Positions 1,200 through 54,043 of a stretch of DNA of 64,000 bases are shown piece by piece (the first letter of the stretch is position 1; each line of letters begins with the position of its first letter). The DNA lies in contig NC_092346.1 in assembly GCF_963676685.1 (NCBI RefSeq), positions 88,660,001 through 88,724,000 of the forward strand. Reading direction: 5' to 3'. Both the position numbers and the translations under genes were made by a program. This DNA comes from Mytilus edulis. Lineage: Eukaryota. The notes beneath the pieces are model-generated. The model searched no databases. It worked only from the letters and a program-made list of their open reading frames with translations, and had not been told where the DNA came from.

Positions 1200-1531
1200 A
1201 ACTAACAAAAACTACGTGTGTACATGCGAATGGTCAACGCCCTGATCGATAATTTCAAATCGAGTCCACCGTATTTAAATACACTCGGGTTCATAAAACC
1301 TGTTACAATTCTATTGTTATATTAATAGAATTATCATACGATAAAATTCTTCCGCCACGTACATAAATATATTTATTTTCTAAATTCTCTTCGTTCAAAC
1401 GAACATAAATTATTTATGTACTAGACTATATAATTTCTATATCCCTCGGCCCAATCTGTTTCTTATCTCATTCATAATATAAATAACTAAAACACTAGTT
1501 TTAGAACTTGTCAGGCACGATGACCATTCTC
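1200..1531 (-). repeat. Internal B1/A2 junction of the split direct repeats
   Basis: 1200-1372 matches 5591-5763 and directly abuts 1373-1531, which matches 830-988. This reproduces the circle junction of the element. Confidence 0.92.
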
Positions 1532-1565
1532 GATTGTACAAAGAAAGAAATTGCAGTAATAAATC

Positions 1566-2585: not shown

Positions 2586-2834
2586 CTGTAAAATAATTAT
2601 AAATTAAATAAATATTTACCTTGAAATATGCGTAACTGCTCAGCATACATCAAACAGAAAAACAGGTCCAGTGACCATAACTATACCCAGTGGTATCTAC
2701 AGACCCTGTGGCCCCAAAAATATCGTCAAATGACACAATATATACATCAATCAGCTTCTGTAAGCCAACATCTCTGAATAGAGAACCTCCAGTAAGAAAA
2801 ATCTGCAAAAAATAGTAAAAAGTTATCACAAAAA

Positions 2835-5559: not shown

Positions 5560-5590
5560 TGTTAACTTAAGTCTACGGCAATACAGGTTC

Positions 5591-5763
5591 AACTAACAAA
5601 AACTACGTGTGTACATGCGAATGGTCAACGCCCTTATCGATAATTTCAAATCGAGTCCACCGTATTTAAATACACTCGGGTTCATAAAACCTGTTACAAT
5701 TCTATTGTTATATTAATAGAATTATCATACGATAAAATTCTTCCGCCACGTACATAAATATAT
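5591..5763 (-). repeat. Split direct repeat A1 (element 5' terminus)
   Basis: Matches 1200-1372 with one mismatch (ccttatc vs cctgatc). Confidence 0.92.
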
Positions 5764-36755: not shown

Positions 36756-37687
36756 TTTTTTTTGTTCTCTTTTCTTTTGGAGGAGGGGGAGGGGGGGGGG
36801 CTCCGAAAATTGTAGTTTTATGTCAAAGAACTCTATAATCACCAGGAAATGATAGGTCTCTCTCTATGCAAACAATACTATTTGCATCACTTCAATGTCG
36901 CTGAACAGGTATAGAGGAATCATTATTTTTCTTTGTCTTTTCTGTAAATGTCTAATTCAATTCACCTGTCAGCTCCGGTCACAAGTCTGGAAATCGTCAG
37001 TTCTTGTCTTTGTTTCAAGTTGGGCTTCTTTTTCCTGCACTTGAAAAAAAAAAAATTGGTGCTGATCACAGATTTATGTATTTTCTGTGAAAGAGGAAGG
37101 ACCAATGTCTACTGTATTTATTTCACAGCAGGATCATTTTCAAAAGAAAAAGTCTCTTATTCTTAATGTACCCAAAACAAACAAAACACGTAGTAGAATA
37201 GCCTCATGTGCGCATACAATAAACACAATTCCCGATATTTTTTAGACAAATTTCGAGTATCCACCGTGAAAAAAAAAATCAACATAAAAAAGTCATCCTT
37301 AAAATGATGCAAATAACCACATTTAGCTGTGCGACGTCCTTCGACGTTAAATTTCACCAAAATTTGTAAAATTGTATTTTTGTCTTTTTTTCTCTCTTAT
37401 TTTATCAATGTTTTTTCTTTCTTTCTTTCACAGTAATATAGCACTCTAATGATAAGGACCGATTGAATTTCTTCAGTCTAATAATTTTAGTACTCGTAAC
37501 CATATGGACACACTGCCACGTGTACATGTATATTATAAATAGATAGCCGTAGTTTCTCACTTTAATTGCATGTTTTAAATAATGTTTTTTTTTTTAAATA
37601 CATACATGTCGTTTATGCAAATATGGTTTATGTATCGGTACCTAACATGATCATGTATAAATAGTGAAAATTTCCACATGTTTATCG

Positions 37688-37982
37688 GTTGGGAGTTGTG
37701 GCGTGCTCCTGTGATCCAGCTACCTGGAGACCGGAGTCGGTGAACGGTGTGAGGGCAGGAGTCCTGCTTTCAGGTGTTCTATGTTGAGCGGGCGTCCGCA
37801 CTAAGATCGGTATCAATATGGGCACACCGAGGGAGCTCAGTGTGACCAGGTTGTCTAAGGAGGGACGTACAGGCCAAGGGCGGAAACGCAGCAGGCAAAA
37901 GTCCCCGTGTCGATCAGTAGTGGGATCGCGCCTGTGAATAGGCATCTGTCAGCAGCCTGTCCAATATAATTGGACTCGGCTC
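37688..37982 (+). ncRNA. RN7SL: 7SL RNA gene
   Basis: Array copy. Confidence 0.96.
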
Positions 37983-39040
37983 TTTTTTTTGTTCTCTTTT
38001 CTTTTGGAGGAGGGGGAGGGGGGGCTCCGAAAATTGTAGTTTTATGTCAAAGAACTCTATAATCACCAGGAAATGATAGGTCTCTCTCTATGCAAACAAT
38101 ACTATTTGCATCACTTCAATGTCGCTGAACAGGTATAGAGGAATCATTATTTTTCTTTGTCTTTTCTGTAAATGTCTAATTCAATTCACCTGTCAGCTCC
38201 GGTCACAAGTCTGGAAATCGTCAGTTCTTGTCTTTGTTTCAAGTTGGGCTTCTTTTTCCTGCACTTGAAAAAAAAAAAAAATTGGTGCTGATCACAGATT
38301 TATGTATTTTCTGTGAAAGAGGAAGGACCAATGTCTACTGTATTTATTTCACAGCAGGATCATTTTCAAAAGAAAAAGTCTCTTATTCTTAATGTACCCA
38401 AAACAAACAAAACACGTAGTAGAATAGCCTCATGTGCGCATACAATAAACACAATTCCCGATATTTTTTAGACAAATTTCGAGTATCCACCGTGAAAAAA
38501 AAAATCAACATAAAAAAGTCATCCTTAAAATGATGCAAATAACCACATTTAGCTGTGCGACGTCCTTCGACGTTAAATTTCACCAAAATTTGTAAAATTG
38601 TATTTTTGTCTTTTTTTCTCTCTTATTTTATCAATGTTTTTTCTTTCTTTCTTTCACAGTAATATAGCACTCTAATGATAAGGACCGATTGAATTTCTTC
38701 AGTCTAATAATTTTAGTACTCGTAACCATATGGACACACTGCCACGTGTACATGTATATTATAAATAGATAGCCGTAGTTTCTCACTTTAATTGCATGTT
38801 TTAAATAATGTTTTTTTTTTTAAATACATACATGTCGTTTATGAGACTTCCGGTTTGGACATTCAGCGAGAAGGACGTAATATTCATAGCTGAATTTCAA
38901 TCGAAATTGTTTTCGTCTTTGGACGAGCCATCCATGGCTTAAGGTGTAAGTGATTACTCTTAGGGACATTTCCTTTGATAATCGAGATTTATTTTCCATA
39001 TATCTGACATTTTAAAGTGTTTTTGTAACCTCCCTTCACC

Positions 39041-40359
39041 ATGCCTGGTGAAAGGGGGGCGAATAGAACTGTGAAGGAACAGACTGTCCTTGTTGATGTT
39101 GGGGACAATAAAAATGTTTCGGCCTTGTCTGTAATAAATAGTGTAGAAGCAGAAATTGGTGAAGGTGTAGTAGAGGCTTGCGTACCTAAAAGCGGAAATG
39201 TTTACGAAATAACTCTTAAAGAATTAGAAGCTGTTGATTTGTTGTGTGACACTGGGTTCAAAGTTAACAATGTGAAATTCCAGCCGAACGCTGTATTTTC
39301 AAAGCAAAAAATGGTGAGCTTCCTAAATGTGTCATATTACGTGACGGATGACGAAATTACGAAAAAACTAGAAGATTTCGGTGCAGAACTTATATCACCT
39401 ATTAAACGCCGAATGCATCCTGGTACGTCCATTGCAGATGGTACAAGGTACGTGGTAGTAAGATTCCCTGAATTTCGTCAAAGTCTACCGTACAGTATGA
39501 AATTTTCGACAGGTGTAAATTCGCACGAATACATACGAGTATTACATGACAACCAGAAAAGAGTCTGTTCGAAATGTTTCGAATCCGGCCATGTTTATAT
39601 TAACTGTCCTGATAATATGTGTTATCGTTGCAAAGAGAGTGGTCATTTGGCACGCAGTTGTCCGAAACCACGCTGTGATAAGTGTCACCGGTATCCAGCT
39701 AACTGTACCTGTGAATTTGTATGGGATCATGATCGTCCTGATACAGAACCCCAAGATGACGTGAATGCTGAAGACTCTAATGTCGAAAACGATAACGTAA
39801 CTAATGATGAACAAATGGAAGAAGATGAAGAGGTTAACAATGATGATCGTGATGATGTTGATGATACGCTAAATTTAGATGACCGTGATGAAGTAACAGA
39901 TGATAAAGAAAATTCCGATGTAAATACTGCCCAAGATGAACTAAACCTAGATGAAAATAATGCACAAGATGAACTTATCCTAGATGAAAATCCTAAAACT
40001 GATTCCGGTGATGATGATGAACAAACTGAAGTTATGACAGTACATGAACTTTCAAAAGACAATTTAATTGACAATGAAATAAATATTTTGCATAAAAAAG
40101 GGGGTCAAGAAAAGTGAACGAGTCAGTTTCTCATGAGTCAAATGTTGTGGTTGATTCTGATGTTGACAAAAATGCAGAGTCTTCGATTGCCAGTGAGACT
40201 GAAATGGAAATAACTGATGAGGAACTGGCTCGTAATATGGGGAAAAAAAGAAGGCGTCGTTTAGTTACTAGCCCCAACCTCACCCCTGAGGATATTAAGA
40301 AGATGAAGTCTAATCCTAAGTCCAAACTCCCCCTTAAACAACCAAGTTCAAGTTCATAG
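39041..40359 (+). CDS. LINE ORF1 (RRM-like region, CCHC zinc knuckles, acidic tail), split by a 1-nt frameshift near 40096-40114
   Basis: CSKCFESGHVYINC and CYRCKESGHLARSC; the 358-aa ORF continues in the -1 frame as the 81-aa ORF ending at 40359. Confidence 0.85.
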
Positions 40360-40362
40360 GTA

Positions 40363-41000
40363 ACGTGATGGTACCCAAATTGCACCTATTTTGACAGTTT
40401 TTTCACCTACGTTTTTTTATGATAAAGACCAAAATTTCCATTCTGTGTTTATTTTGTAGCCGTATCCTTCTTTATTATATAGGTACACCAATTTGATTTT
40501 TAATCCATATGGAATCATAGAAAAATTGGTCTAAACTGACCTCCAAACCATCAATGATTCTAAAATGAGGAGTACCCAAATTGCATCCATGCTTAAATTC
40601 GTACTGTCAAAATTCTAATAACAGAACTTTTGTTTAATTTCTTCAAATATTTTGAACAATTGGATATTAGTCCAGGCTTACTCTTTCGCTTTTTTTAAAT
40701 GGATACTTGTAACATATTGTATTTGATCATTTTAAAAAGATGACGTTTTGATGACGTCGCATGGCGACGTTTCAGTACATTTTGCCTTTCAAAGTCAGTA
40801 AACACTTCATCTGTTGATGAATACTGTGAACGTTTTGTGCATATCTAAATAGTTTTACCTATGTTGAAAGATGTGCATAGTATCAAATCATAAAAATACG
40901 AATTGTTTACGGTCTCTAGGAAATCTTGTAAGATTATTTTTACTATTTTGGCTTAATAGGTGCAATTTGGGTACTCGGTGCAATTTGGGTACCGTTACGT
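40363..41000. mobile_element. 638-bp MITE with TA TSD (Tc1/mariner/pogo-type) between LINE ORF1 and ORF2
   Basis: TA|acgtgatggtacccaaattgcacc ... ggtgcaatttgggtaccgttacgt|TA: 24-bp TIR with 2 mismatches, and the subterminal motif repeated. Confidence 0.88.
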
Positions 41001-41031
41001 TACACACCTTTATTGTTTATTTTTCTTGTTG

Positions 41032-44000
41032 ATGGTAAATATTGTTAGCATAAATGCTAATGGTCTCAGAGATGTAACAAAGTTTCAGAATTTTACAAAA
41101 TATTGTACAGAAAATTATTTTGATATTGTTGGTATACAAGAAACCTTTTGGGATGATGGTATTATTCCAAATATTGAAAAATTTTGGGAAGGAAAAATAT
41201 ATTTTTGTAATGGTGTAAACCTGAGACAAGGTGTTGCTTTTTTAGTAAGCAAAAGAGTACAAAATCAAGTGTCGGAAGTACAAAGTTTTGACGGTAGATG
41301 TATCCATATTTCCTTTAAACAGGATGATAAAACTATTGATATAATTAATTGCTATGTTCCAAACATAATGCAAGAAAAAATTACGTTTTTTGAGAGACTT
41401 ACTTCTAAAATGCCGAATTCGGAAAATATTATTTTACTAGGTGATATGAATACATCTCTGTCAAATCTTGATCGTTGTGGTAAAACAGAACACACACAAG
41501 ATAAAGCATACAAAAAACTCACAAACATTTGTGACATGTCTAACTTGTATGATGTATGGCGAGCGAGAAATCAAAATGCACGAACCTTCTCTTGGCGTCG
41601 TATCGTTCAAAATGTCCTAATACAAAGTAGAATTGACCACATTTTCATTCCGAAAGCATATTCACAATTCGTCAAAAACGTGTATTATAAACATAATACA
41701 TTCAGTGACCACTCTTTTGTTAATCTAAATATAGATTTTACTGAAATTGAGAGAGGCCCAGGGTTATGGATATTTAATAATTTGTTATTACACGACGAGG
41801 ATTATGTTCAAAAAATTTCACGACTAATTGAAAAAGAAAAAAGCTGTAGACTTTTTGATGATGAGCCGCTTATTTGGTATGATAATTTAAAATTTAAAAT
41901 TAAACAATTATCAAAATCATATGCGCAAAATAAATCGCGTATTGAAAAGTCAGAATATTTTAAGCTTCAAAATGAATATGAAAAACTATCGTCTATGGCG
42001 GTAAATAATGTAAATTTTGATGTAAATAAGTTCGAAGAAATGAAACTAAAACTTAAAACATATGAAGATAAAATTTGTAAAGGTGCAATATTGCGCTCAA
42101 AGGCTCAATGGGCTATAGACGGTGATAAAAGTTCTAAATATTTTTTGCAACTTGAAAAATATAAACAAAATAGTAACGCTGTAAAAGAATTAAAAACGAC
42201 AGAGGGCAAAATTTTAAAAACTACAGATGAAATTTTAGAAGAAGTACATAAATTTTATAAAGAGTTATACTCTAGTACAGTAATAGATAAAGATAAAGCA
42301 AAAGAAATTTTGGAATTTATTTCTGAAAAAGTTTCTGATGAAGACAGTGAAAATTTAGAAACCGATTTAACTCTGCATGAAATTAAATCGTCATTATTTG
42401 GCATGTCAAAAAATAAATCACCAGGTCCTGATGGACTAACAGTTGAGTTCTTTTGTAAATTTTTTCATTTGTTTGGTGAGATTTTTCTTAAAATTTTTAA
42501 AGTTATAGAAGAAGAACATATATTAACAAGATCCATGCGGCATGGTATAATAAACTTAGTTTATAAAAACAAAGGGGATAAAAATTCTTTAAAAAATTTT
42601 AGACCGATATCTTTGCTTTGTGTAGACTACAAAATAATTGCTAGAATAATGTCTAATAGATTAAAATTTGTTCTGCCGAAACTAGTGTCTAGTTTTCAAA
42701 CATGTTGCATATTAGGCCGTGACATTGCAGACACTACATCAAGTATAAGAGATTTAATTGAAATAATTGAAAATGATGATTTAGAAGCCTATCTTATAAA
42801 AGTTGATCAGGAAAAAGCTTTTGATAAGGTTGACCATGACTATCTGTTTCTAGTTTTAGAAAAATTTGGTTTTGGCCCTAAATTTATGCAGTGGATTAAA
42901 ATATTCTATAATAATGTAAACAGCAGTGTAAAATGTAATGGTTTCCTTACAAAGTATGTTAAACTTAATAATTCAATAAAACAAGGGTGTCCAGTTTCTG
43001 CTCTCCTCTATGTATTGGTGGCAGAACCATTAGGTCAAGCTATAATTAAAAATAAAAATATCCAGAGTGTAAATATCCCAAAGTCAACTGTAAATGCTAA
43101 AATATTTCAACACGCAGATGACACAAATATTTTTACTTCAAATAAAGAATCTGTAAATGAAACTTTCAAAGTTCTAAATTTGTACAGTGAAGCTTCTGGA
43201 GCTAAAATTAACAGACAAAAATCTGAAATTATGTGCTTAGGTTCTGGCAATATTACTGATTCAGAGTTACATAAACTAAATATACAAAAATGTGAAAATG
43301 TAACAAAAGTTTTAGGCATATATGTTGGAAAAGATAAAGAGTTATGTGAAATTCTAAACTGGAAAGATAAAATAAAAAAGATAAAAACAATTTTATTCTT
43401 TTGGAATAAAAGAGATTTAACTTTACCAGGTCGAGCTACAGTTTTAACTTCCCTTATAATGTCGAGGTTATATTATACTGTAACTGTATGTCCATTGCCA
43501 GAAAAAGTTAAAAATGAAATCCGTCTAATTGTTATAAAGTTTCTTTGGCAAAATAAATCACATTTAGTAAAATATCAAAGTGTAGTAGGTACAAAACTTG
43601 AAGGTGGATTAAATATTCCTGATATTTTTCTAAAAATGCAAGCCTTTAGACTAAAATTTCTTAAAAAATATTTGGATCCTGAATGTCAATCAATCTGGAA
43701 AGGTGCGTTTGATTACTTTATTACTAAAATCGATAATATGGATTTAAAACAAGATATTGTGTATACGCATTTAAATTCAAAACAGATTAAACACTTACCA
43801 CTTTATTATCAAGAAATGATAAACGCATATTATAAAATAAAAGCCGATTTCAAAATCGATTTTCAAGTGCAACATGTATATAATAATCCGCTGTTTTGTA
43901 ATCCAAATATAACATGCAACGGTAAAATGCTTCTGTTTGAAAAATTCATTCAAACAGGCTTGATACGGATAAAAGACATTTGCTATGAATTTATGCCGGG

Positions 44001-44883
44001 TTTCTTCACATCAAATTCAATAGATGAAATAATAAAACAAAAATTTCCTGATGAAAAAACAGAACAAATAAAAACAGCTTTCGAAAAAATCATACGATGT
44101 ATTCCTGAAGAGTGGAAAGAACTATCAAAATCCGAAAATCCTCTGAATGTTGAAAATGCTCCGATTGTTAAAATTTGTTTAGATAATGACAGAGAAATTC
44201 ATTTTAGAAGTGCTGTGACGAAATTTTTTTACAGCCTTCTTCTGTCAAATTTTTTTGAAACGCCCTCTGCTGAAAAGCATTGGGAGGAGCAGTATCCGCC
44301 TCTCAATTTCAAAAGTCTTTATTTGGTTGTCAATCAGAGTTGTTTACCTCCTGATTGTCATTGTTTAAATTATAGGATTGTCCATCGAGCTATTTTTACA
44401 CTTGAAAAGTTGGTCAAAATAGGTCAGGCAGATACAGGCACATGCAAAGCATGCGGCCAAGGTATAGAGAATCTTGGTCACCTGTTTGTACATTGTCAAA
44501 AGATTCAACCACTTCATGATTACCTGAAAGACACATTACACAACATATTTATTAATTACCCACCTGACATGGTTAATTCCATTGATTATGAACAGTTATT
44601 TTTACTTGGGTTATTAAAACGTTCACAAGATATTAATACTTATTTTCTAAACTTTTTCCTTAGTGTAGCCCGAGTTTGCATATTCAAAACACGGAATTTA
44701 AAAGTTTTTCATGACAAAGAAATAGATGCACTACGTTTTTTCAAATACACAATAAGAAAATACATTGAATACGCATACACGTATTATAAAATGACACAAC
44801 AAAGACAATTATTCTACAAATATTTTTTACACAAAAACACTTTATTAGATATTCAAAACGACAACATAGTTTTGTTTGTCTAG
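41032..44883 (+). CDS. LINE ORF2 (AP endonuclease, reverse transcriptase, C-terminal zinc finger), 1283 aa, uninterrupted
   Basis: APE motifs SINANGL, IQET, GDMN, SRIDH and FSDH; RT motifs KSPGPDG, RPISLL, DQEKAFD, KQGCPVS and HADD; CKAC...HLFVHC. Confidence 0.95.
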   Translation: MVNIVSINANGLRDVTKFQNFTKYCTENYFDIVGIQETFWDDGIIPNIEKFWEGKIYFCNGVNLRQGVAFLVSKRVQNQVSEVQSFDGRCIHISFKQDDKTIDIINCYVPNIMQEKITFFERLTSKMPNSENIILLGDMNTSLSNLDRCGKTEHTQDKAYKKLTNICDMSNLYDVWRARNQNARTFSWRRIVQNVLIQSRIDHIFIPKAYSQFVKNVYYKHNTFSDHSFVNLNIDFTEIERGPGLWIFNNLLLHDEDYVQKISRLIEKEKSCRLFDDEPLIWYDNLKFKIKQLSKSYAQNKSRIEKSEYFKLQNEYEKLSSMAVNNVNFDVNKFEEMKLKLKTYEDKICKGAILRSKAQWAIDGDKSSKYFLQLEKYKQNSNAVKELKTTEGKILKTTDEILEEVHKFYKELYSSTVIDKDKAKEILEFISEKVSDEDSENLETDLTLHEIKSSLFGMSKNKSPGPDGLTVEFFCKFFHLFGEIFLKIFKVIEEEHILTRSMRHGIINLVYKNKGDKNSLKNFRPISLLCVDYKIIARIMSNRLKFVLPKLVSSFQTCCILGRDIADTTSSIRDLIEIIENDDLEAYLIKVDQEKAFDKVDHDYLFLVLEKFGFGPKFMQWIKIFYNNVNSSVKCNGFLTKYVKLNNSIKQGCPVSALLYVLVAEPLGQAIIKNKNIQSVNIPKSTVNAKIFQHADDTNIFTSNKESVNETFKVLNLYSEASGAKINRQKSEIMCLGSGNITDSELHKLNIQKCENVTKVLGIYVGKDKELCEILNWKDKIKKIKTILFFWNKRDLTLPGRATVLTSLIMSRLYYTVTVCPLPEKVKNEIRLIVIKFLWQNKSHLVKYQSVVGTKLEGGLNIPDIFLKMQAFRLKFLKKYLDPECQSIWKGAFDYFITKIDNMDLKQDIVYTHLNSKQIKHLPLYYQEMINAYYKIKADFKIDFQVQHVYNNPLFCNPNITCNGKMLLFEKFIQTGLIRIKDICYEFMPGFFTSNSIDEIIKQKFPDEKTEQIKTAFEKIIRCIPEEWKELSKSENPLNVENAPIVKICLDNDREIHFRSAVTKFFYSLLLSNFFETPSAEKHWEEQYPPLNFKSLYLVVNQSCLPPDCHCLNYRIVHRAIFTLEKLVKIGQADTGTCKACGQGIENLGHLFVHCQKIQPLHDYLKDTLHNIFINYPPDMVNSIDYEQLFLLGLLKRSQDINTYFLNFFLSVARVCIFKTRNLKVFHDKEIDALRFFKYTIRKYIEYAYTYYKMTQQRQLFYKYFLHKNTLLDIQNDNIVLFV

Positions 44884-45272
44884 ACAGTTACTTCTATTTG
44901 ATTGGTTGTTAGAACAATAGATCACATTCCAACGTAAAATTATCGATCGCACTTAGGTGTGTTTGACTTTTGAAAATATTTTGGAGTTGTCTCGCTTTCA
45001 ATATAGAATTTGTCCACCGTCTATTCATACAGACTTTTTTGAAAAATGAATCGCCATAAAAAAAACAACATATTATGCTGTATATAATTCTTTTAACTTT
45101 TAAAACATGTACATCTAGATGTATTTTATTTTTTTACTAATGTAGGAGGATAACTACTAACAACTCTGTATATAGCAAAATTCTCACCAACGAGGAATGT
45201 CTCAATGGTGACAGTATGTAAATATGTAATAAAAATTTTATTAATGATAAAAAAAAAAAAAAAAAAAAAAAA

Positions 45273-45544
45273 GTGATCCAGCTACCTGGAGACCGGAGTC
45301 GGTGAACGGTGTGAGGGCAGGAGTCCTGCTTTCAGGTGTTCTATGTTGAGCGGGCGTCCGCACTAAGATCGGTATCAATATGGGCACACCGAGGGAGCTC
45401 AGTGTGACCAGGTTGTCTAAGGAGGGACGTACAGGCCAAGGGCGGAAACGCAGCAGGCAAAAGTCCCCGTGTCGATCAGTAGTGGGATCGCGCCTGTGAA
45501 TAGGCATCTGTCAGCAGCCTGTCCAATATAATTGGACTCGGCTC
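45273..45544 (+). pseudogene. RN7SL: 7SL gene lacking its promoter and nt 1-23 (LINE-disrupted)
   Basis: Begins gtgatccagctacc directly after the poly(A) tail. Confidence 0.92.
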
Positions 45545-46601
45545 TTTTTTTTTGTTCTCTTTTCTTTTGGAGGAGGGGGGGGGGGGGCTCCGAAAATTGT
45601 AGTTTTATGTCAAAGAACTCTATAATCACCAGGAAATGATAGGTCTCTCTCTATGCAAACAATACTATTTGCATCACTTCAATGTCGCTGAACAGGTATA
45701 GAGGAATCATTATTTTTCTTTGTCTTTTCTGTAAATGTCTAATTCAATTCACCTGTCAGCTCCGGTCACAAGTCTGGAAATCGTCAGTTCTTGTCTTTGT
45801 TTCAAGTTGGGCTTCTTTTTCCTGCACTTGAAAAAAAAAAAATTGGTGCTGATCACAGATTTATGTATTTTCTGTGAAAGAGGAAGGACCAATGTCTACT
45901 GTATTTATTTCACAGCAGGATCATTTTCAAAAGAAAAAGTCTCTTATTCTTAATGTACCCAAAACAAACAAAACACGTAGTAGAATAGCCTCATGTGCGC
46001 ATACAATAAACACAATTCCCGATATTTTTTAGACAAATTTCGAGTATCCACCGTGAAAAAAAAAATCAACATAAAAAAGTCATCCTTAAAATGATGCAAA
46101 TAACCACATTTAGCTGTGCGACGTCCTTCGACGTTAAATTTCACCAAAATTTGTAAAATTGTATTTTTGTCTTTTTTTCTCTCTTATTTTATCAATGTTT
46201 TTTCTTTCTTTCTTTCACAGTAATATAGCACTCTAATGATAAGGACCGATTGAATTTCTTCAGTCTAATAATTTTAGTACTCGTAACCATATGGACACAC
46301 TGCCACGTGTACATGTATATTATAAATAGATAGCCGTAGTTTCTCACTTTAATTGCATGTTTTAAATAATGTTTTTTTTTTTAAATACATACATGTCGTT
46401 TATGAGACTTCCGGTTTGGACATTCAGCGAGAAGGACGTAATATTCATAGCTGAATTTCAATCGAAATTGTTTTCGTCTTTGGACGAGCCATCCATGGCT
46501 TAAGGTGTAAGTGATTACTCTTAGGGACATTTCCTTTGATAATCGAGATTTATTTTCCATATATCTGACATTTTAAAGTGTTTTTGTAACCTCCCTTCAC
46601 C

Positions 46602-47920
46602 ATGCCTGGTGAAAGGGGGGCGAATAGAACTGTGAAGGAACAGACTGTCCTTGTTGATGTTGGGGACAATAAAAATGTTTCGGCCTTGTCTGTAATAAAT
46701 AGTGTAGAAGCAGAAATTGGTGAAGGTGTAGTAGAGGCTTGCGTACCTAAAAGCGGAAATGTTTACGAAATAACTCTTAAAGAATTAGAAGCTGTTGATT
46801 TGTTGTGTGACACTGGGTTCAAAGTTAACAATGTGAAATTCCAGCCGAACGCTGTATTTTCAAAGCAAAAAATGGTGAGCTTCCTAAATGTGTCATATTA
46901 CGTGACGGATGACGAAATTACGAAAAAACTAGAAGATTTCGGTGCAGAACTTATATCACCTATTAAACGCCGAATGCATCCTGGTACGTCCATTGCAGAT
47001 GGTACAAGGTACGTGGTAGTAAGATTCCCTGAATTTCGTCAAAGTCTACCGTACAGTATGAAATTTTCGACAGGTGTAAATTCGCACGAATACATACGAG
47101 TATTACATGACAACCAGAAAAGAGTCTGTTCGAAATGTTTCGAATCCGGCCATGTTTATATTAACTGTCCTGATAATATGTGTTATCGTTGCAAAGAGAG
47201 TGGTCATTTGGCACGCAGTTGTCCGAAACCACGCTGTGATAAGTGTCACCGGTATCCAGCTAACTGTACCTGTGAATTTGTATGGGATCATGATCGTCCT
47301 GATACAGAACCCCAAGATGACGTGAATGCTGAAGACTCTAATGTCGAAAACGATAACGTAACTAATGATGAACAAATGGAAGAAGATGAAGAGGTTAACA
47401 ATGATGATCGTGATGATGTTGATGATACGCTAAATTTAGATGACCGTGATGAAGTAACAGATGATAAAGAAAATTCCGATGTAAATACTGCCCAAGATGA
47501 ACTAAACCTAGATGAAAATAATGCACAAGATGAACTTATCCTAGATGAAAATCCTAAAACTGATTCCGGTGATGATGATGAACAAACTGAAGTTATGACA
47601 GTACATGAACTTTCAAAAGACAATTTAATTGACAATGAAATAAATATTTTGCATAAAAAAGGGGGTCAAGAAAAGTGAACGAGTCAGTTTCTCATGAGTC
47701 AAATGTTGTGGTTGATTCTGATGTTGACAAAAATGCAGAGTCTTCGATTGCCAGTGAGACTGAAATGGAAATAACTGATGAGGAACTGGCTCGTAATATG
47801 GGGAAAAAAAGAAGGCGTCGTTTAGTTACTAGCCCCAACCTCACCCCTGAGGATATTAAGAAGATGAAGTCTAATCCTAAGTCCAAACTCCCCCTTAAAC
47901 AACCAAGTTCAAGTTCATAG
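46602..47920 (+). CDS. LINE ORF1, copy 2 (same frameshift)
   Basis: Translation identical to copy 1. Confidence 0.85.
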
Positions 47921-47923
47921 GTA

Positions 47924-48561
47924 ACGTGATGGTACCCAAATTGCACCTATTTTGACAGTTTTTTCACCTACGTTTTTTTATGATAAAGACCAAAATTTCC
48001 ATTCTGTGTTTATTTTGTAGCCGTATCCTTCTTTATTATATAGGTACACCAATTTGATTTTTAATCCATATGGAATCATAGAAAAATTGGTCTAAACTGA
48101 CCTCCAAACCATCAATGATTCTAAAATGAGGAGTACCCAAATTGCATCCATGCTTAAATTCGTACTGTCAAAATTCTAATAACAGAACTTTTGTTTAATT
48201 TCTTCAAATATTTTGAACAATTGGATATTAGTCCAGGCTTACTCTTTCGCTTTTTTTAAATGGATACTTGTAACATATTGTATTTGATCATTTTAAAAAG
48301 ATGACGTTTTGATGACGTCGCATGGCGACGTTTCAGTACATTTTGCCTTTCAAAGTCAGTAAACACTTCATCTGTTGATGAATACTGTGAACGTTTTGTG
48401 CATATCTAAATAGTTTTACCTATGTTGAAAGATGTGCATAGTATCAAATCATAAAAATACGAATTGTTTACGGTCTCTAGGAAATCTTGTAAGATTATTT
48501 TTACTATTTTGGCTTAATAGGTGCAATTTGGGTACTCGGTGCAATTTGGGTACCGTTACGT
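47924..48561. mobile_element. 638-bp TA-TSD MITE, copy 2
   Basis: Same as 40363-41000. Confidence 0.88.
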
Positions 48562-48592
48562 TACACACCTTTATTGTTTATTTTTCTTGTTG

Positions 48593-51500
48593 ATGGTAAA
48601 TATTGTTAGCATAAATGCTAATGGTCTCAGAGATGTAACAAAGTTTCAGAATTTTACAAAATATTGTACAGAAAATTATTTTGATATTGTTGGTATACAA
48701 GAAACCTTTTGGGATGATGGTATTATTCCAAATATTGAAAAATTTTGGGAAGGAAAAATATATTTTTGTAATGGTGTAAACCTGAGACAAGGTGTTGCTT
48801 TTTTAGTAAGCAAAAGAGTACAAAATCAAGTGTCGGAAGTACAAAGTTTTGACGGTAGATGTATCCATATTTCCTTTAAACAGGATGATAAAACTATTGA
48901 TATAATTAATTGCTATGTTCCAAACATAATGCAAGAAAAAATTACGTTTTTTGAGAGACTTACTTCTAAAATGCCGAATTCGGAAAATATTATTTTACTA
49001 GGTGATATGAATACATCTCTGTCAAATCTTGATCGTTGTGGTAAAACAGAACACACACAAGATAAAGCATACAAAAAACTCACAAACATTTGTGACATGT
49101 CTAACTTGTATGATGTATGGCGAGCGAGAAATCAAAATGCACGAACCTTCTCTTGGCGTCGTATCGTTCAAAATGTCCTAATACAAAGTAGAATTGACCA
49201 CATTTTCATTCCGAAAGCATATTCACAATTCGTCAAAAACGTGTATTATAAACATAATACATTCAGTGACCACTCTTTTGTTAATCTAAATATAGATTTT
49301 ACTGAAATTGAGAGAGGCCCAGGGTTATGGATATTTAATAATTTGTTATTACACGACGAGGATTATGTTCAAAAAATTTCACGACTAATTGAAAAAGAAA
49401 AAAGCTGTAGACTTTTTGATGATGAGCCGCTTATTTGGTATGATAATTTAAAATTTAAAATTAAACAATTATCAAAATCATATGCGCAAAATAAATCGCG
49501 TATTGAAAAGTCAGAATATTTTAAGCTTCAAAATGAATATGAAAAACTATCGTCTATGGCGGTAAATAATGTAAATTTTGATGTAAATAAGTTCGAAGAA
49601 ATGAAACTAAAACTTAAAACATATGAAGATAAAATTTGTAAAGGTGCAATATTGCGCTCAAAGGCTCAATGGGCTATAGACGGTGATAAAAGTTCTAAAT
49701 ATTTTTTGCAACTTGAAAAATATAAACAAAATAGTAACGCTGTAAAAGAATTAAAAACGACAGAGGGCAAAATTTTAAAAACTACAGATGAAATTTTAGA
49801 AGAAGTACATAAATTTTATAAAGAGTTATACTCTAGTACAGTAATAGATAAAGATAAAGCAAAAGAAATTTTGGAATTTATTTCTGAAAAAGTTTCTGAT
49901 GAAGACAGTGAAAATTTAGAAACCGATTTAACTCTGCATGAAATTAAATCGTCATTATTTGGCATGTCAAAAAATAAATCACCAGGTCCTGATGGACTAA
50001 CAGTTGAGTTCTTTTGTAAATTTTTTCATTTGTTTGGTGAGATTTTTCTTAAAATTTTTAAAGTTATAGAAGAAGAACATATATTAACAAGATCCATGCG
50101 GCATGGTATAATAAACTTAGTTTATAAAAACAAAGGGGATAAAAATTCTTTAAAAAATTTTAGACCGATATCTTTGCTTTGTGTAGACTACAAAATAATT
50201 GCTAGAATAATGTCTAATAGATTAAAATTTGTTCTGCCGAAACTAGTGTCTAGTTTTCAAACATGTTGCATATTAGGCCGTGACATTGCAGACACTACAT
50301 CAAGTATAAGAGATTTAATTGAAATAATTGAAAATGATGATTTAGAAGCCTATCTTATAAAAGTTGATCAGGAAAAAGCTTTTGATAAGGTTGACCATGA
50401 CTATCTGTTTCTAGTTTTAGAAAAATTTGGTTTTGGCCCTAAATTTATGCAGTGGATTAAAATATTCTATAATAATGTAAACAGCAGTGTAAAATGTAAT
50501 GGTTTCCTTACAAAGTATGTTAAACTTAATAATTCAATAAAACAAGGGTGTCCAGTTTCTGCTCTCCTCTATGTATTGGTGGCAGAACCATTAGGTCAAG
50601 CTATAATTAAAAATAAAAATATCCAGAGTGTAAATATCCCAAAGTCAACTGTAAATGCTAAAATATTTCAACACGCAGATGACACAAATATTTTTACTTC
50701 AAATAAAGAATCTGTAAATGAAACTTTCAAAGTTCTAAATTTGTACAGTGAAGCTTCTGGAGCTAAAATTAACAGACAAAAATCTGAAATTATGTGCTTA
50801 GGTTCTGGCAATATTACTGATTCAGAGTTACATAAACTAAATATACAAAAATGTGAAAATGTAACAAAAGTTTTAGGCATATATGTTGGAAAAGATAAAG
50901 AGTTATGTGAAATTCTAAACTGGAAAGATAAAATAAAAAAGATAAAAACAATTTTATTCTTTTGGAATAAAAGAGATTTAACTTTACCAGGTCGAGCTAC
51001 AGTTTTAACTTCCCTTATAATGTCGAGGTTATATTATACTGTAACTGTATGTCCATTGCCAGAAAAAGTTAAAAATGAAATCCGTCTAATTGTTATAAAG
51101 TTTCTTTGGCAAAATAAATCACATTTAGTAAAATATCAAAGTGTAGTAGGTACAAAACTTGAAGGTGGATTAAATATTCCTGATATTTTTCTAAAAATGC
51201 AAGCCTTTAGACTAAAATTTCTTAAAAAATATTTGGATCCTGAATGTCAATCAATCTGGAAAGGTGCGTTTGATTACTTTATTACTAAAATCGATAATAT
51301 GGATTTAAAACAAGATATTGTGTATACGCATTTAAATTCAAAACAGATTAAACACTTACCACTTTATTATCAAGAAATGATAAACGCATATTATAAAATA
51401 AAAGCCGATTTCAAAATCGATTTTCAAGTGCAACATGTATATAATAATCCGCTGTTTTGTAATCCAAATATAACATGCAACGGTAAAATGCTTCTGTTTG

Positions 51501-52444
51501 AAAAATTCATTCAAACAGGCTTGATACGGATAAAAGACATTTGCTATGAATTTATGCCGGGTTTCTTCACATCAAATTCAATAGATGAAATAATAAAACA
51601 AAAATTTCCTGATGAAAAAACAGAACAAATAAAAACAGCTTTCGAAAAAATCATACGATGTATTCCTGAAGAGTGGAAAGAACTATCAAAATCCGAAAAT
51701 CCTCTGAATGTTGAAAATGCTCCGATTGTTAAAATTTGTTTAGATAATGACAGAGAAATTCATTTTAGAAGTGCTGTGACGAAATTTTTTTACAGCCTTC
51801 TTCTGTCAAATTTTTTTGAAACGCCCTCTGCTGAAAAGCATTGGGAGGAGCAGTATCCGCCTCTCAATTTCAAAAGTCTTTATTTGGTTGTCAATCAGAG
51901 TTGTTTACCTCCTGATTGTCATTGTTTAAATTATAGGATTGTCCATCGAGCTATTTTTACACTTGAAAAGTTGGTCAAAATAGGTCAGGCAGATACAGGC
52001 ACATGCAAAGCATGCGGCCAAGGTATAGAGAATCTTGGTCACCTGTTTGTACATTGTCAAAAGATTCAACCACTTCATGATTACCTGAAAGACACATTAC
52101 ACAACATATTTATTAATTACCCACCTGACATGGTTAATTCCATTGATTATGAACAGTTATTTTTACTTGGGTTATTAAAACGTTCACAAGATATTAATAC
52201 TTATTTTCTAAACTTTTTCCTTAGTGTAGCCCGAGTTTGCATATTCAAAACACGGAATTTAAAAGTTTTTCATGACAAAGAAATAGATGCACTACGTTTT
52301 TTCAAATACACAATAAGAAAATACATTGAATACGCATACACGTATTATAAAATGACACAACAAAGACAATTATTCTACAAATATTTTTTACACAAAAACA
52401 CTTTATTAGATATTCAAAACGACAACATAGTTTTGTTTGTCTAG
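48593..52444 (+). CDS. LINE ORF2, copy 2 (APE-RT-zinc finger)
   Basis: Translation identical to copy 1. Confidence 0.95.
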   Translation: MVNIVSINANGLRDVTKFQNFTKYCTENYFDIVGIQETFWDDGIIPNIEKFWEGKIYFCNGVNLRQGVAFLVSKRVQNQVSEVQSFDGRCIHISFKQDDKTIDIINCYVPNIMQEKITFFERLTSKMPNSENIILLGDMNTSLSNLDRCGKTEHTQDKAYKKLTNICDMSNLYDVWRARNQNARTFSWRRIVQNVLIQSRIDHIFIPKAYSQFVKNVYYKHNTFSDHSFVNLNIDFTEIERGPGLWIFNNLLLHDEDYVQKISRLIEKEKSCRLFDDEPLIWYDNLKFKIKQLSKSYAQNKSRIEKSEYFKLQNEYEKLSSMAVNNVNFDVNKFEEMKLKLKTYEDKICKGAILRSKAQWAIDGDKSSKYFLQLEKYKQNSNAVKELKTTEGKILKTTDEILEEVHKFYKELYSSTVIDKDKAKEILEFISEKVSDEDSENLETDLTLHEIKSSLFGMSKNKSPGPDGLTVEFFCKFFHLFGEIFLKIFKVIEEEHILTRSMRHGIINLVYKNKGDKNSLKNFRPISLLCVDYKIIARIMSNRLKFVLPKLVSSFQTCCILGRDIADTTSSIRDLIEIIENDDLEAYLIKVDQEKAFDKVDHDYLFLVLEKFGFGPKFMQWIKIFYNNVNSSVKCNGFLTKYVKLNNSIKQGCPVSALLYVLVAEPLGQAIIKNKNIQSVNIPKSTVNAKIFQHADDTNIFTSNKESVNETFKVLNLYSEASGAKINRQKSEIMCLGSGNITDSELHKLNIQKCENVTKVLGIYVGKDKELCEILNWKDKIKKIKTILFFWNKRDLTLPGRATVLTSLIMSRLYYTVTVCPLPEKVKNEIRLIVIKFLWQNKSHLVKYQSVVGTKLEGGLNIPDIFLKMQAFRLKFLKKYLDPECQSIWKGAFDYFITKIDNMDLKQDIVYTHLNSKQIKHLPLYYQEMINAYYKIKADFKIDFQVQHVYNNPLFCNPNITCNGKMLLFEKFIQTGLIRIKDICYEFMPGFFTSNSIDEIIKQKFPDEKTEQIKTAFEKIIRCIPEEWKELSKSENPLNVENAPIVKICLDNDREIHFRSAVTKFFYSLLLSNFFETPSAEKHWEEQYPPLNFKSLYLVVNQSCLPPDCHCLNYRIVHRAIFTLEKLVKIGQADTGTCKACGQGIENLGHLFVHCQKIQPLHDYLKDTLHNIFINYPPDMVNSIDYEQLFLLGLLKRSQDINTYFLNFFLSVARVCIFKTRNLKVFHDKEIDALRFFKYTIRKYIEYAYTYYKMTQQRQLFYKYFLHKNTLLDIQNDNIVLFV

Positions 52445-52833
52445 ACAGTTACTTCTATTTGATTGGTTGTTAGAACAATAGATCACATTCCAACGTAAAA
52501 TTATCGATCGCACTTAGGTGTGTTTGACTTTTGAAAATATTTTGGAGTTGTCTCGCTTTCAATATAGAATTTGTCCACCGTCTATTCATACAGACTTTTT
52601 TGAAAAATGAATCGCCATAAAAAAAACAACATATTATGCTGTATATAATTCTTTTAACTTTTAAAACATGTACATCTAGATGTATTTTATTTTTTTACTA
52701 ATGTAGGAGGATAACTACTAACAACTCTGTATATAGCAAAATTCTCACCAACGAGGAATGTCTCAATGGTGACAGTATGTAAATATGTAATAAAAATTTT
52801 ATTAATGATAAAAAAAAAAAAAAAAAAAAAAAA

Positions 52834-53105
52834 GTGATCCAGCTACCTGGAGACCGGAGTCGGTGAACGGTGTGAGGGCAGGAGTCCTGCTTTCAGGTGT
52901 TCTATGTTGAGCGGGCGTCCGCACTAAGATCGGTATCAATATGGGCACACCGAGGGAGCTCAGTGTGACCAGGTTGTCTAAGGAGGGACGTACAGGCCAA
53001 GGGCGGAAACGCAGCAGGCAAAAGTCCCCGTGTCGATCAGTAGTGGGATCGCGCCTGTGAATAGGCATCTGTCAGCAGCCTGTCTAATATAATTGGACTC
53101 GGCTC
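52834..53105 (+). pseudogene. RN7SL: 7SL gene lacking its promoter and nt 1-23 (LINE-disrupted)
   Basis: Begins gtgatccagctacc directly after the poly(A) tail. Confidence 0.92.
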
Positions 53106-54043
53106 TTTTTTTTTGTTCTCTTTTCTTTTGGAGGAGGGGGAGGGGGGGGGGGGGCTCCGAAAATTGTAGTTTTATGTCAAAGAACTCTATAATCACCAGG
53201 AAATGATAGGTCTCTCTCTATGCAAACAATACTATTTGCATCACTTCAATGTCGCTGAACAGGTATAGAGGAATCATTATTTTTCTTTGTCTTTTCTGTA
53301 AATGTCTAATTCAATTCACCTGTCAACTCCGGTCACAAGTCTGGAAATCGTCAGTTCTTGTCTTTGTTTCAAGTTGGGCTTCTTTTTCCTGCACTTGAAA
53401 AAAAAAAAAAAATTGGTGCTGATCACAGATTTATGTATTTTCTGTGAAAGAGGAAGGACCAATGTCTACTGTATTTATTTCACAGCAGGATCATTTTCAA
53501 AAGAAAAAGTCTCTTATTCTTAATGTACCCAAAACAAACAAAACACGTAGTAGAATAGCCTCATGTGCGCATACAATAAACACAATTCCCGATATTTTTT
53601 AGACAAATTTCGAGTATCCACCGTGAAAAAAAAAATCAACATAAAAAAGTCATCCTTAAAATGATGCAAATAACCACATTTAGCTGTGCGACGTCCTTCG
53701 ACGTTAAATTTCACCAAAATTTGTAAAATTGTATTTTTGTCTTTTTTTCTCTCTTATTTTATCAATGTTTTTTCTTTCTTTCTTTCACAGTAATATAGCA
53801 CTCTAATGATAAGGACCGATTGAATTTCTTCAGTCTAATAATTTTAGTACTCGTAACCATATGGACACACTGCCACGTGTACATGTATATTATAAATAGA
53901 TAGCCGTAGTTTCTCACTTTAATTGCATGTTTTAAATAATGTTTTTTTTTTAAATACATACATGTCGTTTATGCAAATATGGTTTATGTATCGGTACCTA
54001 ACATGATCATGTATAAATAGTGAAAATTTCCACATGTTTATCG

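What the first reader, a model, noticed from the sequence alone, without database searches (positions are those of the whole stretch)
38844..45290. Candidate 7SL-gene-specific Tx1-type retrotransposon inserted in the conserved UGUNR motif of SRP RNA
Seen: a full-length APE-RT LINE with intact ORF2 lies in the sense orientation, with its A24 tail joined to 7SL nt +24 (ctcct|gtgatccagc). This splits UGUGA, the position equivalent to human U23-G24-U25-A26-G27. The site has no T-tract for poly(A) priming, although every array unit offers long A/T runs that an ordinary L1-type endonuclease would prefer. Established: UGUNR is the most conserved Alu-domain motif (SRP9/14 binding); Tx1-clade elements are often sequence-specific for multicopy targets such as U2 snRNA genes, tRNA arrays and microsatellites. 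Inference: this family uses the tandem 7SL array as a safe-haven niche, much as R2 uses rDNA. Caveat: the two copies here probably reflect one insertion event, and I cannot confirm that no 7SL-specific Tx1 family is already catalogued.
Basis: partly seen in the sequence, partly recalled or inferred. Interest (0 to 1): 0.9.

Follow-up and report, generated by a model that had tools for sequence, protein, structure and literature searches.

The report
LINE clade that homes into tRNA/7SL genes
The retrotransposon sitting in this 7SL RNA gene is not specific to 7SL. It belongs to a young mussel LINE lineage whose independent copies almost all lie inside RNA polymerase III genes (mainly tRNA genes), at one conserved spot just after the internal A-box promoter. 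I found no description of this targeting pattern for LINEs in the papers I searched.

Summary
A 6.4-kb APE-RT LINE (38844-45272; identical second copy 46405-52833) is joined by an A24 tail to 7SL nt +24, and 93 bp of target (promoter plus 7SL nt 1-23) are deleted. ORF2 is open. ORF1 carries a 1-nt frameshift, and a 638-bp MITE lies between the ORFs.

The "7SL-specific" reading fails. The assembly has 84 uninterrupted 7SL +24 sites and only this one, duplicated, insertion. All other copies of the same family (99.4-99.9% identical) lie in tRNA genes: Ala, Ser-AGA twice, Leu-CAG, and a tRNA-like gene. They are sense-oriented, with poly(A) joined at the D-loop/D-stem boundary (about tRNA 21|22) and 15-17 bp target duplications that end at position 38.

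Relatives with only 43-58% ORF2 identity do the same in tRNA-Trp, Asn, Thr, Tyr/Lys, Gln and Ala, including contigs from other public data sets.

Best reading: a Tx1/L1-group LINE clade that nicks the template strand of A-box Pol III genes 12-16 nt past the A-box start. 7SL is an occasional target. Whether the A box is read directly or through TFIIIC/Pol III is not resolved.

This is a new variant of target-specific LINEs. Interest 0.72.

The parts
37688..37985 (+). Nearest intact 7SL (SRP RNA) gene of the tandem array. It is the reference for the pre-insertion site (nick between T23 at 37710 and G24 at 37711).
   Evidence: Rfam RF00017, 263 bits, model positions 1-299; sequence.
37618..37710 (+). 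The stretch in the intact unit that corresponds to the 93 bp missing at the insertion: the TATA-like box (tataaata) and 7SL nt 1-23, including the A-box-like TGGCGTGCTCC.
   Evidence: Comparison of 37580-37720 with 38800-38850 and 45240-45290.
38844..45272 (+). LINE copy 1 (family A), full length, including the A24 tail (45249-45272).
   Evidence: The 5' end at 38843-38845 is shared by four independent full-length copies elsewhere. The 3' end was confirmed by pattern search.
39041..40117 (+). ORF1 (CCHC zinc knuckle), cut to 358 aa in the window copy by a 1-nt deletion near 40099. It is 439 aa in copies L032, L033 and L034.
40363..41000 (.). 638-bp MITE with ~24-bp terminal inverted repeats and a TA duplication, nested between ORF1 and ORF2. 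It is absent from all other family-A copies.
   Evidence: Gap in the blastn alignments to the other copies; TIRs and TA duplication.
41032..44883 (+). ORF2 (open): APE endonuclease, reverse transcriptase and a C-terminal zinc-binding domain. The mechanically listed ORF begins at 40960, inside the MITE.
   Evidence: Pfam PF03372, PF14529, PF00078 and PF13966. Collinear with human L1 ORF2p residues 8-881, E 1.6e-77. M25 aligns with the start of family-B ORF2.
44884..45248 (+). 3' UTR of the LINE, used as the family probe.
   Evidence: 96-100% matches at 9 places in the genome.
45273..45547 (+). 5'-truncated 7SL gene (nt 24-299), directly after the poly(A).
   Evidence: Rfam RF00017, 224 bits; sequence.
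46405..52833 (+). LINE copy 2. It is identical to copy 1 (same frameshift, MITE and A24) and arose by tandem duplication of a 7561-bp block.
   Evidence: w1 equals w2 with 0 differences. 38270-45523 is identical to 45831-53084.
52834..53108 (+). Second 5'-truncated 7SL gene (nt 24-299).
   Evidence: Rfam RF00017, 221 bits.

Best explanation
The element belongs to a young family (here 'family A') of a Tx1/L1-group LINE clade that integrates inside RNA polymerase III genes carrying an internal A box. Most targets are tRNA genes. This 7SL gene is an occasional target.

Shown:
- Integration is by target-primed reverse transcription in the sense orientation.
- The bottom (template) strand is nicked at the end of the D-loop, just before the 3' strand of the D-stem (about tRNA 21|22). 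That is 12-16 nt after the start of the A box (G-T-R-G-C). In 7SL the nick is 13 nt after GTGGC (T23|G24).
- Poly(A) primes cDNA synthesis with 0-2 nt of A/T microhomology.
- The second-strand cut usually falls 15-17 bp downstream, at the 3' end of the anticodon loop (position 38|39), and gives short TSDs.
- In tandem arrays the 5' junction can lie elsewhere. It then reads as a long duplication or as a deletion, such as the 93-bp deletion that removed the 7SL promoter and nt 1-23 here.
- After insertion, the LINE plus one array unit was duplicated in tandem.

Inferred: the locally shared DNA motif carries too little information to explain exclusive use of Pol III genes. The RNP is therefore most likely positioned by the A-box-bound transcription machinery (TFIIIC, TFIIIB or Pol III), with the endonuclease cutting at a fixed distance. 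My odds are about 55% for this, about 35% for direct reading of A-box/D-arm DNA by ORF2p, and about 10% for something else.
For: 1. Exhaustive 3'-end search. Only 9 family-A ends exist in the 1.37-Gb assembly. They represent 6 independent events, which differ in tail length, 5' truncation and TSD. All lie in Pol III genes and all are in sense orientation:
- 7SL: A24|GTGATCC.
- tRNA-Ala: 579-bp copy, ...A8|GCGCTCGC.
- tRNA-Ser-AGA: A9|GGCGAT.
- tRNA-Ser-AGA again: A6|GCGAT, 15-bp TSD.
- tRNA-Leu-CAG: A7TAA|GGCGCT.
- A tRNA-like gene: 60-bp copy, A10|GAGCAC, 16-bp TSD.

2. Independent copies are 99.4-99.9% identical, so the family is young.

3. Divergent relatives use the same site.
- An older relative sits in tRNA-Asn.
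- Family B (43% ORF2 identity) sits in tRNA-Trp at GGTA|GCGC, with an A29 tail and a 17-bp TSD.
- Contigs from other public data sets show A10|GAGC... in tRNA-Thr-AGT and tRNA-Tyr-GTA. The Tyr copy has tRNA-Lys nt 1-38 at its 5' junction. A family-A-like 5' end lies 9 nt after a tRNA-Gln of an array.
- Another LINE 5' end is joined to tRNA-Ala at about nt 58.

4. On an ORF2 tree the tRNA-linked members fall in three separate subclades.

5. Sub-threshold Rfam tRNA hits cover the truncated flanks, and arrays of intact paralogues surround them.

6. The only non-tRNA target is another A-box Pol III gene, cut at the same distance from GTGGC.

7. An extra 5' G in one event fits a capped Pol II transcript.
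Against: - The nick position is not perfectly fixed. tRNA-Asn is about 3 nt upstream, tRNA-Ala is 1-2 nt downstream, and A-tail ambiguity adds 1-3 nt.
- The 7SL site (CCT|GTGA) lacks the T|A-G-S-S context seen in the tRNAs, so it could be a plain off-target.
- The closest sister family (68% aa identity in the C-terminal part; at least 10 dispersed copies) has non-tRNA flanks. The specificity is therefore labile and not a property of every member.
- Old 79-85% copies of the 3' UTR on contig C4 lie in non-tRNA repeats.
- No host-factor contact, nicking activity or transcription was tested.
- Only six events exist for family A itself.
Confidence: 0.85

Rival explanations
1. One reading: the family is specific for the 7SL gene (UGUNR site) and uses the 7SL tandem array as its safe haven, as R2 uses rDNA.
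For: One insertion lies exactly at 7SL +23|+24 with no T-tract. 7SL is a multicopy tandem array.
Against: Only one 7SL event exists, present as two identical copies, against 84 uninterrupted sites. The five other independent family-A events are in tRNA or tRNA-like genes.
Confidence: 0.02
2. The targeting is real, but it is purely sequence-specific. The APE/ORF2p reads the conserved A-box/D-arm DNA directly, as Tx1L and R1 endonucleases read their sites. The 7SL insertion is then an off-target at a look-alike sequence (GTGGCG...Y|R).
For: - Eight of ten junctions share T|A-G-S-S just before the D-stem 3' strand.
- Tx1-clade and R1-clade endonucleases are known to be sequence-specific (PMC4494074, PMC1950540).
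- The element's betaB6-betaB5 hairpin has 11 residues, like Tx1L-EN. The best PDB match of the APE domain is the L1-EN/Tx1L loop chimera 2v0r (71 bits against 61 for native L1-EN).
Against: - The shared motif (T-R-G-C, a variable spacer, Y|R-G) is short. By my estimate it would occur at tens of thousands of non-tRNA sites, yet none of the 6 family-A events lies outside a Pol III gene.
- A degenerate tRNA-like gene and 7SL are both used although their D-arm-equivalent sequences differ.
Confidence: 0.35
3. An ordinary, non-targeted L1-like LINE. The tRNA/7SL association reflects survival of insertions in redundant arrays plus spread by array duplication or gene conversion.
For: Segmental and tandem duplication did copy some insertions: the window pair, and three copies on C12. 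The sister family is dispersed.
Against: - Retention bias cannot produce the same nucleotide position and the same orientation in different tRNA isotypes and in 7SL.
- The events have different tails (A6, A8, A9, A10, A24, A29), different 5' truncations and different TSDs.
- Even if Pol III genes made up 1% of the genome, six of six would have a probability of 1e-12 (my arithmetic).
Confidence: 0.03

Closest known systems
Tx1-clade target-specific LINEs: Tx1L (Tx1D transposon), Keno (U2 snRNA), Mutsu (5S rRNA), Kibi/Koshi (microsatellites), Tx1-Mar, and Dewa (spacer of tRNA-Leu arrays in zebrafish)
   Same: - APE-RT ORF2 of the L1 group.
- ORF1 with a CCHC knuckle.
- Poly(A) tail.
- Insertion at a defined site of a multicopy sequence, in a fixed orientation.
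- An 11-residue endonuclease hairpin loop, as in Tx1L-EN (PMC4494074, PMC3706591, PMC1950540).
   Different: The known Tx1 targets listed in PMC4494074 (Fig. 3 legend) are U2, U5, 5S, satellites, transposons and microsatellites. Dewa sits in a tRNA-Leu spacer, not inside the gene. Here one family enters several different tRNA isotypes and 7SL at a structurally equivalent internal position, and only the first-strand nick is precise.
NeSL-clade (restriction-like endonuclease) tRNA-specific LINEs: NeSL-1_TV (tRNA-Pro), LIN15_SM (tRNA-Arg), LIN25_SM (tRNA-Glu)
   Same: Non-LTR retrotransposons that insert in tRNA genes (PMC4640811).
   Different: Those elements carry an RLE endonuclease, and each family is tied to a single tRNA species. 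Here the endonuclease is APE-type and the families use many isotypes.
Pol III-directed retrotransposons: Dictyostelium TRE5/TRE3/NLTR, yeast Ty1 and Ty3
   Same: Homing to Pol III genes in general rather than to one sequence. TRE5-A is an L1-like APE LINE whose ORF1p binds TFIIIB and needs the B box (PMC5911963).
   Different: All of those insert upstream or downstream of the gene (Ty3 at the transcription start site) and spare it. This clade inserts inside the gene, between the A and B boxes, and kills the copy. No metazoan example is listed in that review.
Dada DNA transposons (tRNA, U1 and U6 genes; fish, water flea, oyster, polychaete, Perkinsus)
   Same: They insert inside small-RNA genes at fixed positions. 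Perkinsus Dada duplicates TAGCTC, part of the A box. Copies with 5' and 3' flanks from different tRNA genes occur, as in L051 here (PMC3706591, PMC8869645).
   Different: Dada is a DDE transposase element with 6-7 bp TSDs, and each family has one target gene.

Membership tests
L1-group / Tx1-clade non-LTR retrotransposon | ORF2 with an N-terminal APE endonuclease, a central RT and a C-terminal Cys-rich domain, collinear with L1 ORF2p | tested here: met
   Pfam PF03372, PF14529, PF00078 and PF13966. phmmer hit to human L1 ORF2p over residues 26-895, E 1.6e-77.
L1-group / Tx1-clade non-LTR retrotransposon | ORF1 of the zinc-knuckle (CCHC) type; poly(A) tail; TSDs of TPRT type | tested here: met
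   zf-CCHC in ORF1. Tails of A6 to A29 and TSDs of 15-17 bp.
L1-group / Tx1-clade non-LTR retrotransposon | RT phylogeny places it in Tx1 rather than L1 proper | not testable with these tools
   No Repbase/Dfam reference sequences were available. Indirect hints:
- The best PDB match of the APE domain is the L1-EN chimera that carries the Tx1L hairpin (2v0r, 71 bits against 61).
- The hairpin loop has 11 residues, as in Tx1L-EN (PMC1950540).
- A bivalve LINE survey lists Tx1, but not L1 proper, among bivalve clades (PMC10294476).
   Pattern search for poly(A) joined to 7SL +24: only the two identical window copies. 84 uninterrupted sites remain.
   Five other independent events lie in tRNA-Ala, Ser (twice), Leu and a tRNA-like gene.
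Pol III-machinery-guided retrotransposons (TRE5/Ty3 type) | Targets are Pol III genes of different sequence | tested here: met
   Nine tRNA isotypes (Ala, Ser, Leu, Trp, Asn, Thr, Tyr, Lys, Gln), one tRNA-like gene and 7SL.
Pol III-machinery-guided retrotransposons (TRE5/Ty3 type) | Insertion beside the gene, at a set distance from the transcription start or the B box | tested here: not met
   The insertion lies inside the gene, at tRNA 21|22 or 7SL 23|24.
Pol III-machinery-guided retrotransposons (TRE5/Ty3 type) | Physical contact of an element protein with TFIIIB, TFIIIC or Pol III, and dependence on a working promoter | not testable with these tools
   This needs biochemistry or genetics. 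It is only inferred here, from the low information content of the shared DNA motif.
NeSL-type tRNA-specific LINEs | Restriction-like endonuclease; one tRNA species per family | tested here: not met
   The endonuclease is APE-type. Family A alone uses Ala, Ser, Leu and 7SL.
Metazoan SRP (7SL) RNA gene (the target) | Match to Rfam RF00017 above the gathering score | tested here: met
   14 hits of 217-263 bits against a cut-off of 70.

The most novel reading that the evidence does not exclude
A widespread molluscan Tx1-group LINE clade does not read a DNA sequence. It reads the assembled Pol III promoter complex (TFIIIC on the A box) as a molecular ruler and nicks the template strand a fixed 12-16 nt into any A-box gene (tRNAs, 7SL, tRNA-derived SINE heads). 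This would be the first metazoan, gene-internal case of transcription-factor-guided TPRT.
Probability: 0.4. Interest if true: 0.85.

Novelty: new variant of a known kind. Interest (0 to 1): 0.72.

Why it matters
Target-specific LINEs such as R2, R1 and Tx1 are the natural models for site-directed RNA-templated gene insertion. Known Pol III-directed retrotransposons (Ty1/Ty3, TRE5/TRE3) are confined to yeasts and amoebae and land beside genes.

This case is an animal LINE clade that enters many different tRNA genes and 7SL at one equivalent internal position, with a sister family that has lost the habit. It offers a natural comparison for mapping what sets an APE-LINE's target: endonuclease loop, ORF1p, or a host factor.

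It also suggests how tRNA and 7SL arrays in bivalves can acquire dead units and large LINE-bearing duplications. For the window itself, the 7SL insertion is one side event of a tRNA-gene-homing family, not evidence for a 7SL-dedicated parasite.

Tried and rejected
I did not try to obtain those letters another way. As a result I could not read the 3' flanks of the many 31-34% relatives that cluster around the tRNA arrays (C12 46.6-46.8 Mb, C7 21.4 Mb, C11 11.07-11.12 Mb, C5 29.95-29.98 and 87.37-87.46 Mb, C1 92.77-92.79 Mb).
- Read laying on 44700-45290 in four organism labels showed the LINE 3' end at near identity. The poly(A) and its flank were skipped as repeat, so this gave no flank information and no test of whether the 7SL insertion is polymorphic.
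I used a FastTree tree instead. No Tx1/L1 reference sequences were available, so clade placement was not tested.
- Rfam at the permissive threshold gives only sub-threshold, imprecise model ranges for the truncated tRNAs. Positions were therefore read from intact paralogues.
- I considered Pol III read-through or a B box in the LINE 5' UTR as the transcription route and rejected it. By inspection I saw no B-box-like motif at the 5' end and many T-runs.
- I considered U6/L1-type template-switch chimeras and rejected them. Those place the small RNA 5' of the LINE, whereas here the gene's 3' part follows the poly(A) and TSDs are present.
- Full-text searches found no description of a LINE with this target. 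Repbase/Dfam could not be checked.

Full report
**1. What is in the window**

Rfam finds 14 metazoan SRP (7SL) RNA genes. Thirteen form a head-to-tail array from 35233 onward, with a unit of about 1231 bp, and one inverted orphan lies at 7812-8128. Two array hits (45273-45547 and 52834-53108) lack the first 23 nt.

Directly upstream of each truncated gene is a 6.4-kb element (38844-45272 and 46405-52833). It ends in ...ttattaatgat followed by A24, joined to gtgatccagc. The intact unit reads gtggcgtgctcct|gtgatcc with +1 at 37688. The junction is therefore T23|G24, inside the UGUGA of the Alu domain. The equivalence to human U23-G27 rests on my own recollection of human 7SL, plus the fact that the Rfam match starts at model position 1.

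ORF2 has APE, RT and zf-RVT domains, and ORF1 has a CCHC knuckle. ORF2 is collinear with human L1 ORF2p (E 1.6e-77).

**2. Corrections to the observation**

- The 5' junction (...cgtttatg|agacttcc) shows no TSD. 93 bp of target are missing, covering the TATA-like box and 7SL nt 1-23. The same point appears in earlier scan note s1-839134.
- Compared with four other full-length copies, the window copy has a 1-nt deletion near 40099 that shifts the ORF1 frame (358 aa against 439 aa).
- It also carries a 638-bp MITE (TIRs, TA duplication) at 40363-41000, between ORF1 and ORF2. The ORF2 that the ORF listing starts at 40960 begins inside this MITE. The likely ATG is at 41032.
- The two window copies are identical. 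38270-45523 equals 45831-53084 (7254 bp). This indicates one insertion followed by tandem duplication of a 7561-bp block, or an assembly artefact that I could not exclude.

**3. The decisive test: where are the other copies?**

A whole-genome search with the 3' UTR, and a pattern search for the last 29 nt with up to 3 mismatches, find only nine ends of this family. A tenth hit (3 mismatches; C1:92772454) belongs to an older relative, treated in section 4. The remaining two pattern hits (C9, C943) do not end in a poly(A) tail. I took them for chance matches.

The seven family-A ends outside the window fall into five events, all sense-oriented in Pol III genes.

| Event | Place | Target | Copy | Junction / TSD |
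|---|---|---|---|---|
| E2 | C11 | tRNA-Ala-AGC | 579 bp | ...A8\|GCGCTCGC; pre-insertion site GGTAGA\|GCGC, read from a neighbouring tRNA-Ala |
| E3 | C12:46738523 | tRNA-Ser-AGA | full length | A9\|GGCGAT; the 5' flank is a whole tRNA-Ser plus 16 nt (76-bp duplication, or a 1033-bp deletion in the 1109-bp array) |
| E4 | C12, three segmental copies | tRNA-Ser-AGA | full length (one copy cut off by an assembly gap) | A6\|GCGAT; 15-bp TSD gcgatagactagaaa |
| E5 | C7 | tRNA-Leu-CAG | full length | A7TAA\|GGCGCT; 173-bp duplication or 235-bp deletion in a 408-bp array |
| E6 | C1 | tRNA-like gene with A and B boxes | 60 bp | A10\|GAGCAC; 16-bp TSD |

Full-length copies from independent events are 99.4-99.9% identical, so the family is young. 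Contigs from runs under four different coded organism labels contain the 3' end at about 98-100% identity.

By contrast, a search for poly(A) joined to 7SL +24 returns only the two window copies, and 84 7SL copies keep the site intact.

**4. The habit is clade-wide**

- An older relative on C1 is joined to tRNA-Asn-GTT (A11|GTTGGCGCG).
- In locus L035 a second LINE, "family B", lies on the other strand of the Ser/Trp array. It has ORF1 of 625 aa and ORF2 of 1300 aa, with 43% ORF2 identity to family A. It sits in tRNA-Trp-CCA as GGTA|GCGC, with an A29 tail and a 17-bp TSD gcgcgtctgactccaga.
- A scan of public metagenome contigs with an ORF2 alignment gave further cases.
  - L050 has A10|GAGCGCC..., tRNA-Thr-AGT from position 22.
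  - L051 has A10|GAGCGGAGGACTGTAG..., an intron-bearing tRNA-Tyr-GTA from position 22. Its 5' flank is tRNA-Lys-TTT nt 1-38. Such mixed flanks are most simply explained by recombination between two inserted copies.
  - L055 has a family-A-like 5' end 9 nt after the third tRNA-Gln of an array.
- In L003 another LINE 5' end abuts tRNA-Ala at about nt 58.
- On a FastTree ORF2 tree the tRNA-linked elements fall in three subclades. The nearest named relatives are Mytilus proteins.
- Many further 31-34% relatives cluster around the same tRNA arrays.
- Earlier scan note s1-836531 (a polyadenylated element in a tRNA-SINE head with a 147-bp duplication) may be another case. I did not test it.

**5. Anatomy of the target**

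With intact paralogues as reference, the junction lies at the end of the D-loop, directly before the 3' strand of the D-stem:

- Ser: TTAA|GGC
- Leu: CTAA|GGC
- Trp: GGTA|GCGC
- Thr, Tyr and E6: (A)|GAGC
- Ala: 1-2 nt further 3'
- Asn: 3 nt further 5'

Counted from the start of the A box (G7-T8-R9-G10-C11), the nick falls after 12-16 nt. In 7SL it falls 13 nt after GTGGC. Terminal A residues of the target give 0-2 nt of microhomology with the tail.

In the four events with short duplications or an informative 5' flank, the upstream junction is at position 38|39, the 3' end of the anticodon loop. This indicates a stagger of 15-17 bp. Elsewhere the 5' junction is variable. Only the first nick appears to be targeted.

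**6. Mechanism**

Shown: TPRT into the template strand of Pol III genes at an A-box-proximal position, in sense orientation, followed by array or segmental duplication.

Inferred: the recognition step. The sequence shared by all sites (T-R-G-C, a spacer, Y|R-G) is short. A degenerate tRNA-like gene and 7SL are both accepted. No family-A copy lies outside a Pol III gene. I therefore favour positioning by the A-box-bound transcription machinery (about 55%) over direct DNA readout (about 35%).

Points for direct readout:
- Tx1-clade endonucleases are known to be sequence-specific.
- This APE has an 11-residue betaB6-betaB5 hairpin like Tx1L-EN.
- Its best PDB match is the L1-EN/Tx1L loop chimera (PMC1950540).

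The closest sister family (68% aa identity in the C-terminal part) is dispersed. Three of its copies lie in one unknown repeat. Specificity has therefore changed recently and could be mapped by comparing the two families.

**7. Comparison with what is known**

- The Tx1 families with known targets listed in PMC4494074 go to U2, U5, 5S, satellites, transposons or microsatellites. Dewa sits in a tRNA-Leu spacer (PMC3706591).
- tRNA-gene-specific LINEs are known in the RLE-bearing NeSL clade, with one tRNA per family (PMC4640811).
- Pol III-guided retrotransposons of yeasts and amoebae insert beside genes (PMC5911963).
- Dada DNA transposons insert inside tRNA genes (PMC3706591, PMC8869645).
- I found no description of an APE-LINE clade that enters many tRNA isotypes and 7SL at one equivalent internal site. 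Repbase/Dfam could not be searched.

**8. Verdict**

The finding is better described as a tRNA/Pol III-gene-homing LINE clade, of which this 7SL insertion is a single, duplicated event. Novelty: new variant of a known kind. Interest 0.72.

Noticed in passing
L022-L030 (G000 C14, C13, C10, C8, C7, C3, C2); places listed: A sister LINE family (68% aa identity to family A in the ORF2 C-terminal part, partly similar 3' UTR) has at least 10 near-identical full-length copies on many chromosomes. Its flanks are not tRNA genes. Three flanks (L024, L025, L026/27) fall at about the same place in one unknown repeat family (..CTGTTGG..GAGTAAAAC.CGTACG..).
   Followed up: partly
window 40363-41000 and 47924-48561: A 638-bp MITE with ~24-bp terminal inverted repeats (ACGTRAYGGTACCCAAATTGCACC) and a TA duplication is nested in the LINE between ORF1 and ORF2. 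It is absent from every other copy of the family.
   Followed up: partly
L009-L015, L017, L019, L020 (G000 C4, 46.8-54.8 Mb): Copies of the family-A 3' UTR at 79-94% identity, some only partial. Where the 3' end is present (79-85% copies) there is no clean poly(A). The same flanks recur, as if an old copy had been amplified within a large block repeat on C4. The flanks are not tRNA.
   Followed up: no
L003/L045 minus strand (G000 C11, about 65419335): A second tRNA-Ala (nt 1 to about 58) is joined directly to another LINE 5' end (AGGACTTCCGGTTAG...), 1.36 kb from the truncated family-A copy. Only the 5' junction is visible.
   Followed up: partly
L051 1430-1470 and 7620-7700 (contig JYMV01051942): One LINE copy has tRNA-Lys-TTT nt 1-38 at its 5' side and tRNA-Tyr-GTA from nt 22 at its 3' side. 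This suggests recombination between copies in different tRNA genes, as reported for Dada-tL.
   Followed up: partly
window 1500-5600 (- strand): A DIRS-like retroelement: ORFs with a CCHC knuckle, a reverse transcriptase and a phage-integrase-type tyrosine recombinase.
   Followed up: partly
window 7812-8128 (- strand): An inverted orphan 7SL unit with a small internal duplication (caggagtcctg repeated) and an insertion of about 60 bp in its upstream promoter region, 27 kb from the array.
   Followed up: no
G000 C3:88695237-88747368, C147, C1808: The 7SL genes form large tandem arrays: 84 uninterrupted +24 sites in the assembly. Subarrays are marked by single-base variants (CCAGGTACC on C3, CCATCTACC on C147 and C1808), which suggests local homogenisation.
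   Followed up: no
G000 C12 46.62-46.74 Mb (L032, L034-L036): The Ser(-)/Trp(+) tRNA array (1109-bp unit) carries both family A (in Ser) and family B (in Trp). A block holding both has been segmentally duplicated three times (spacings of about 54.6 kb and 12.6 kb).
   Followed up: partly
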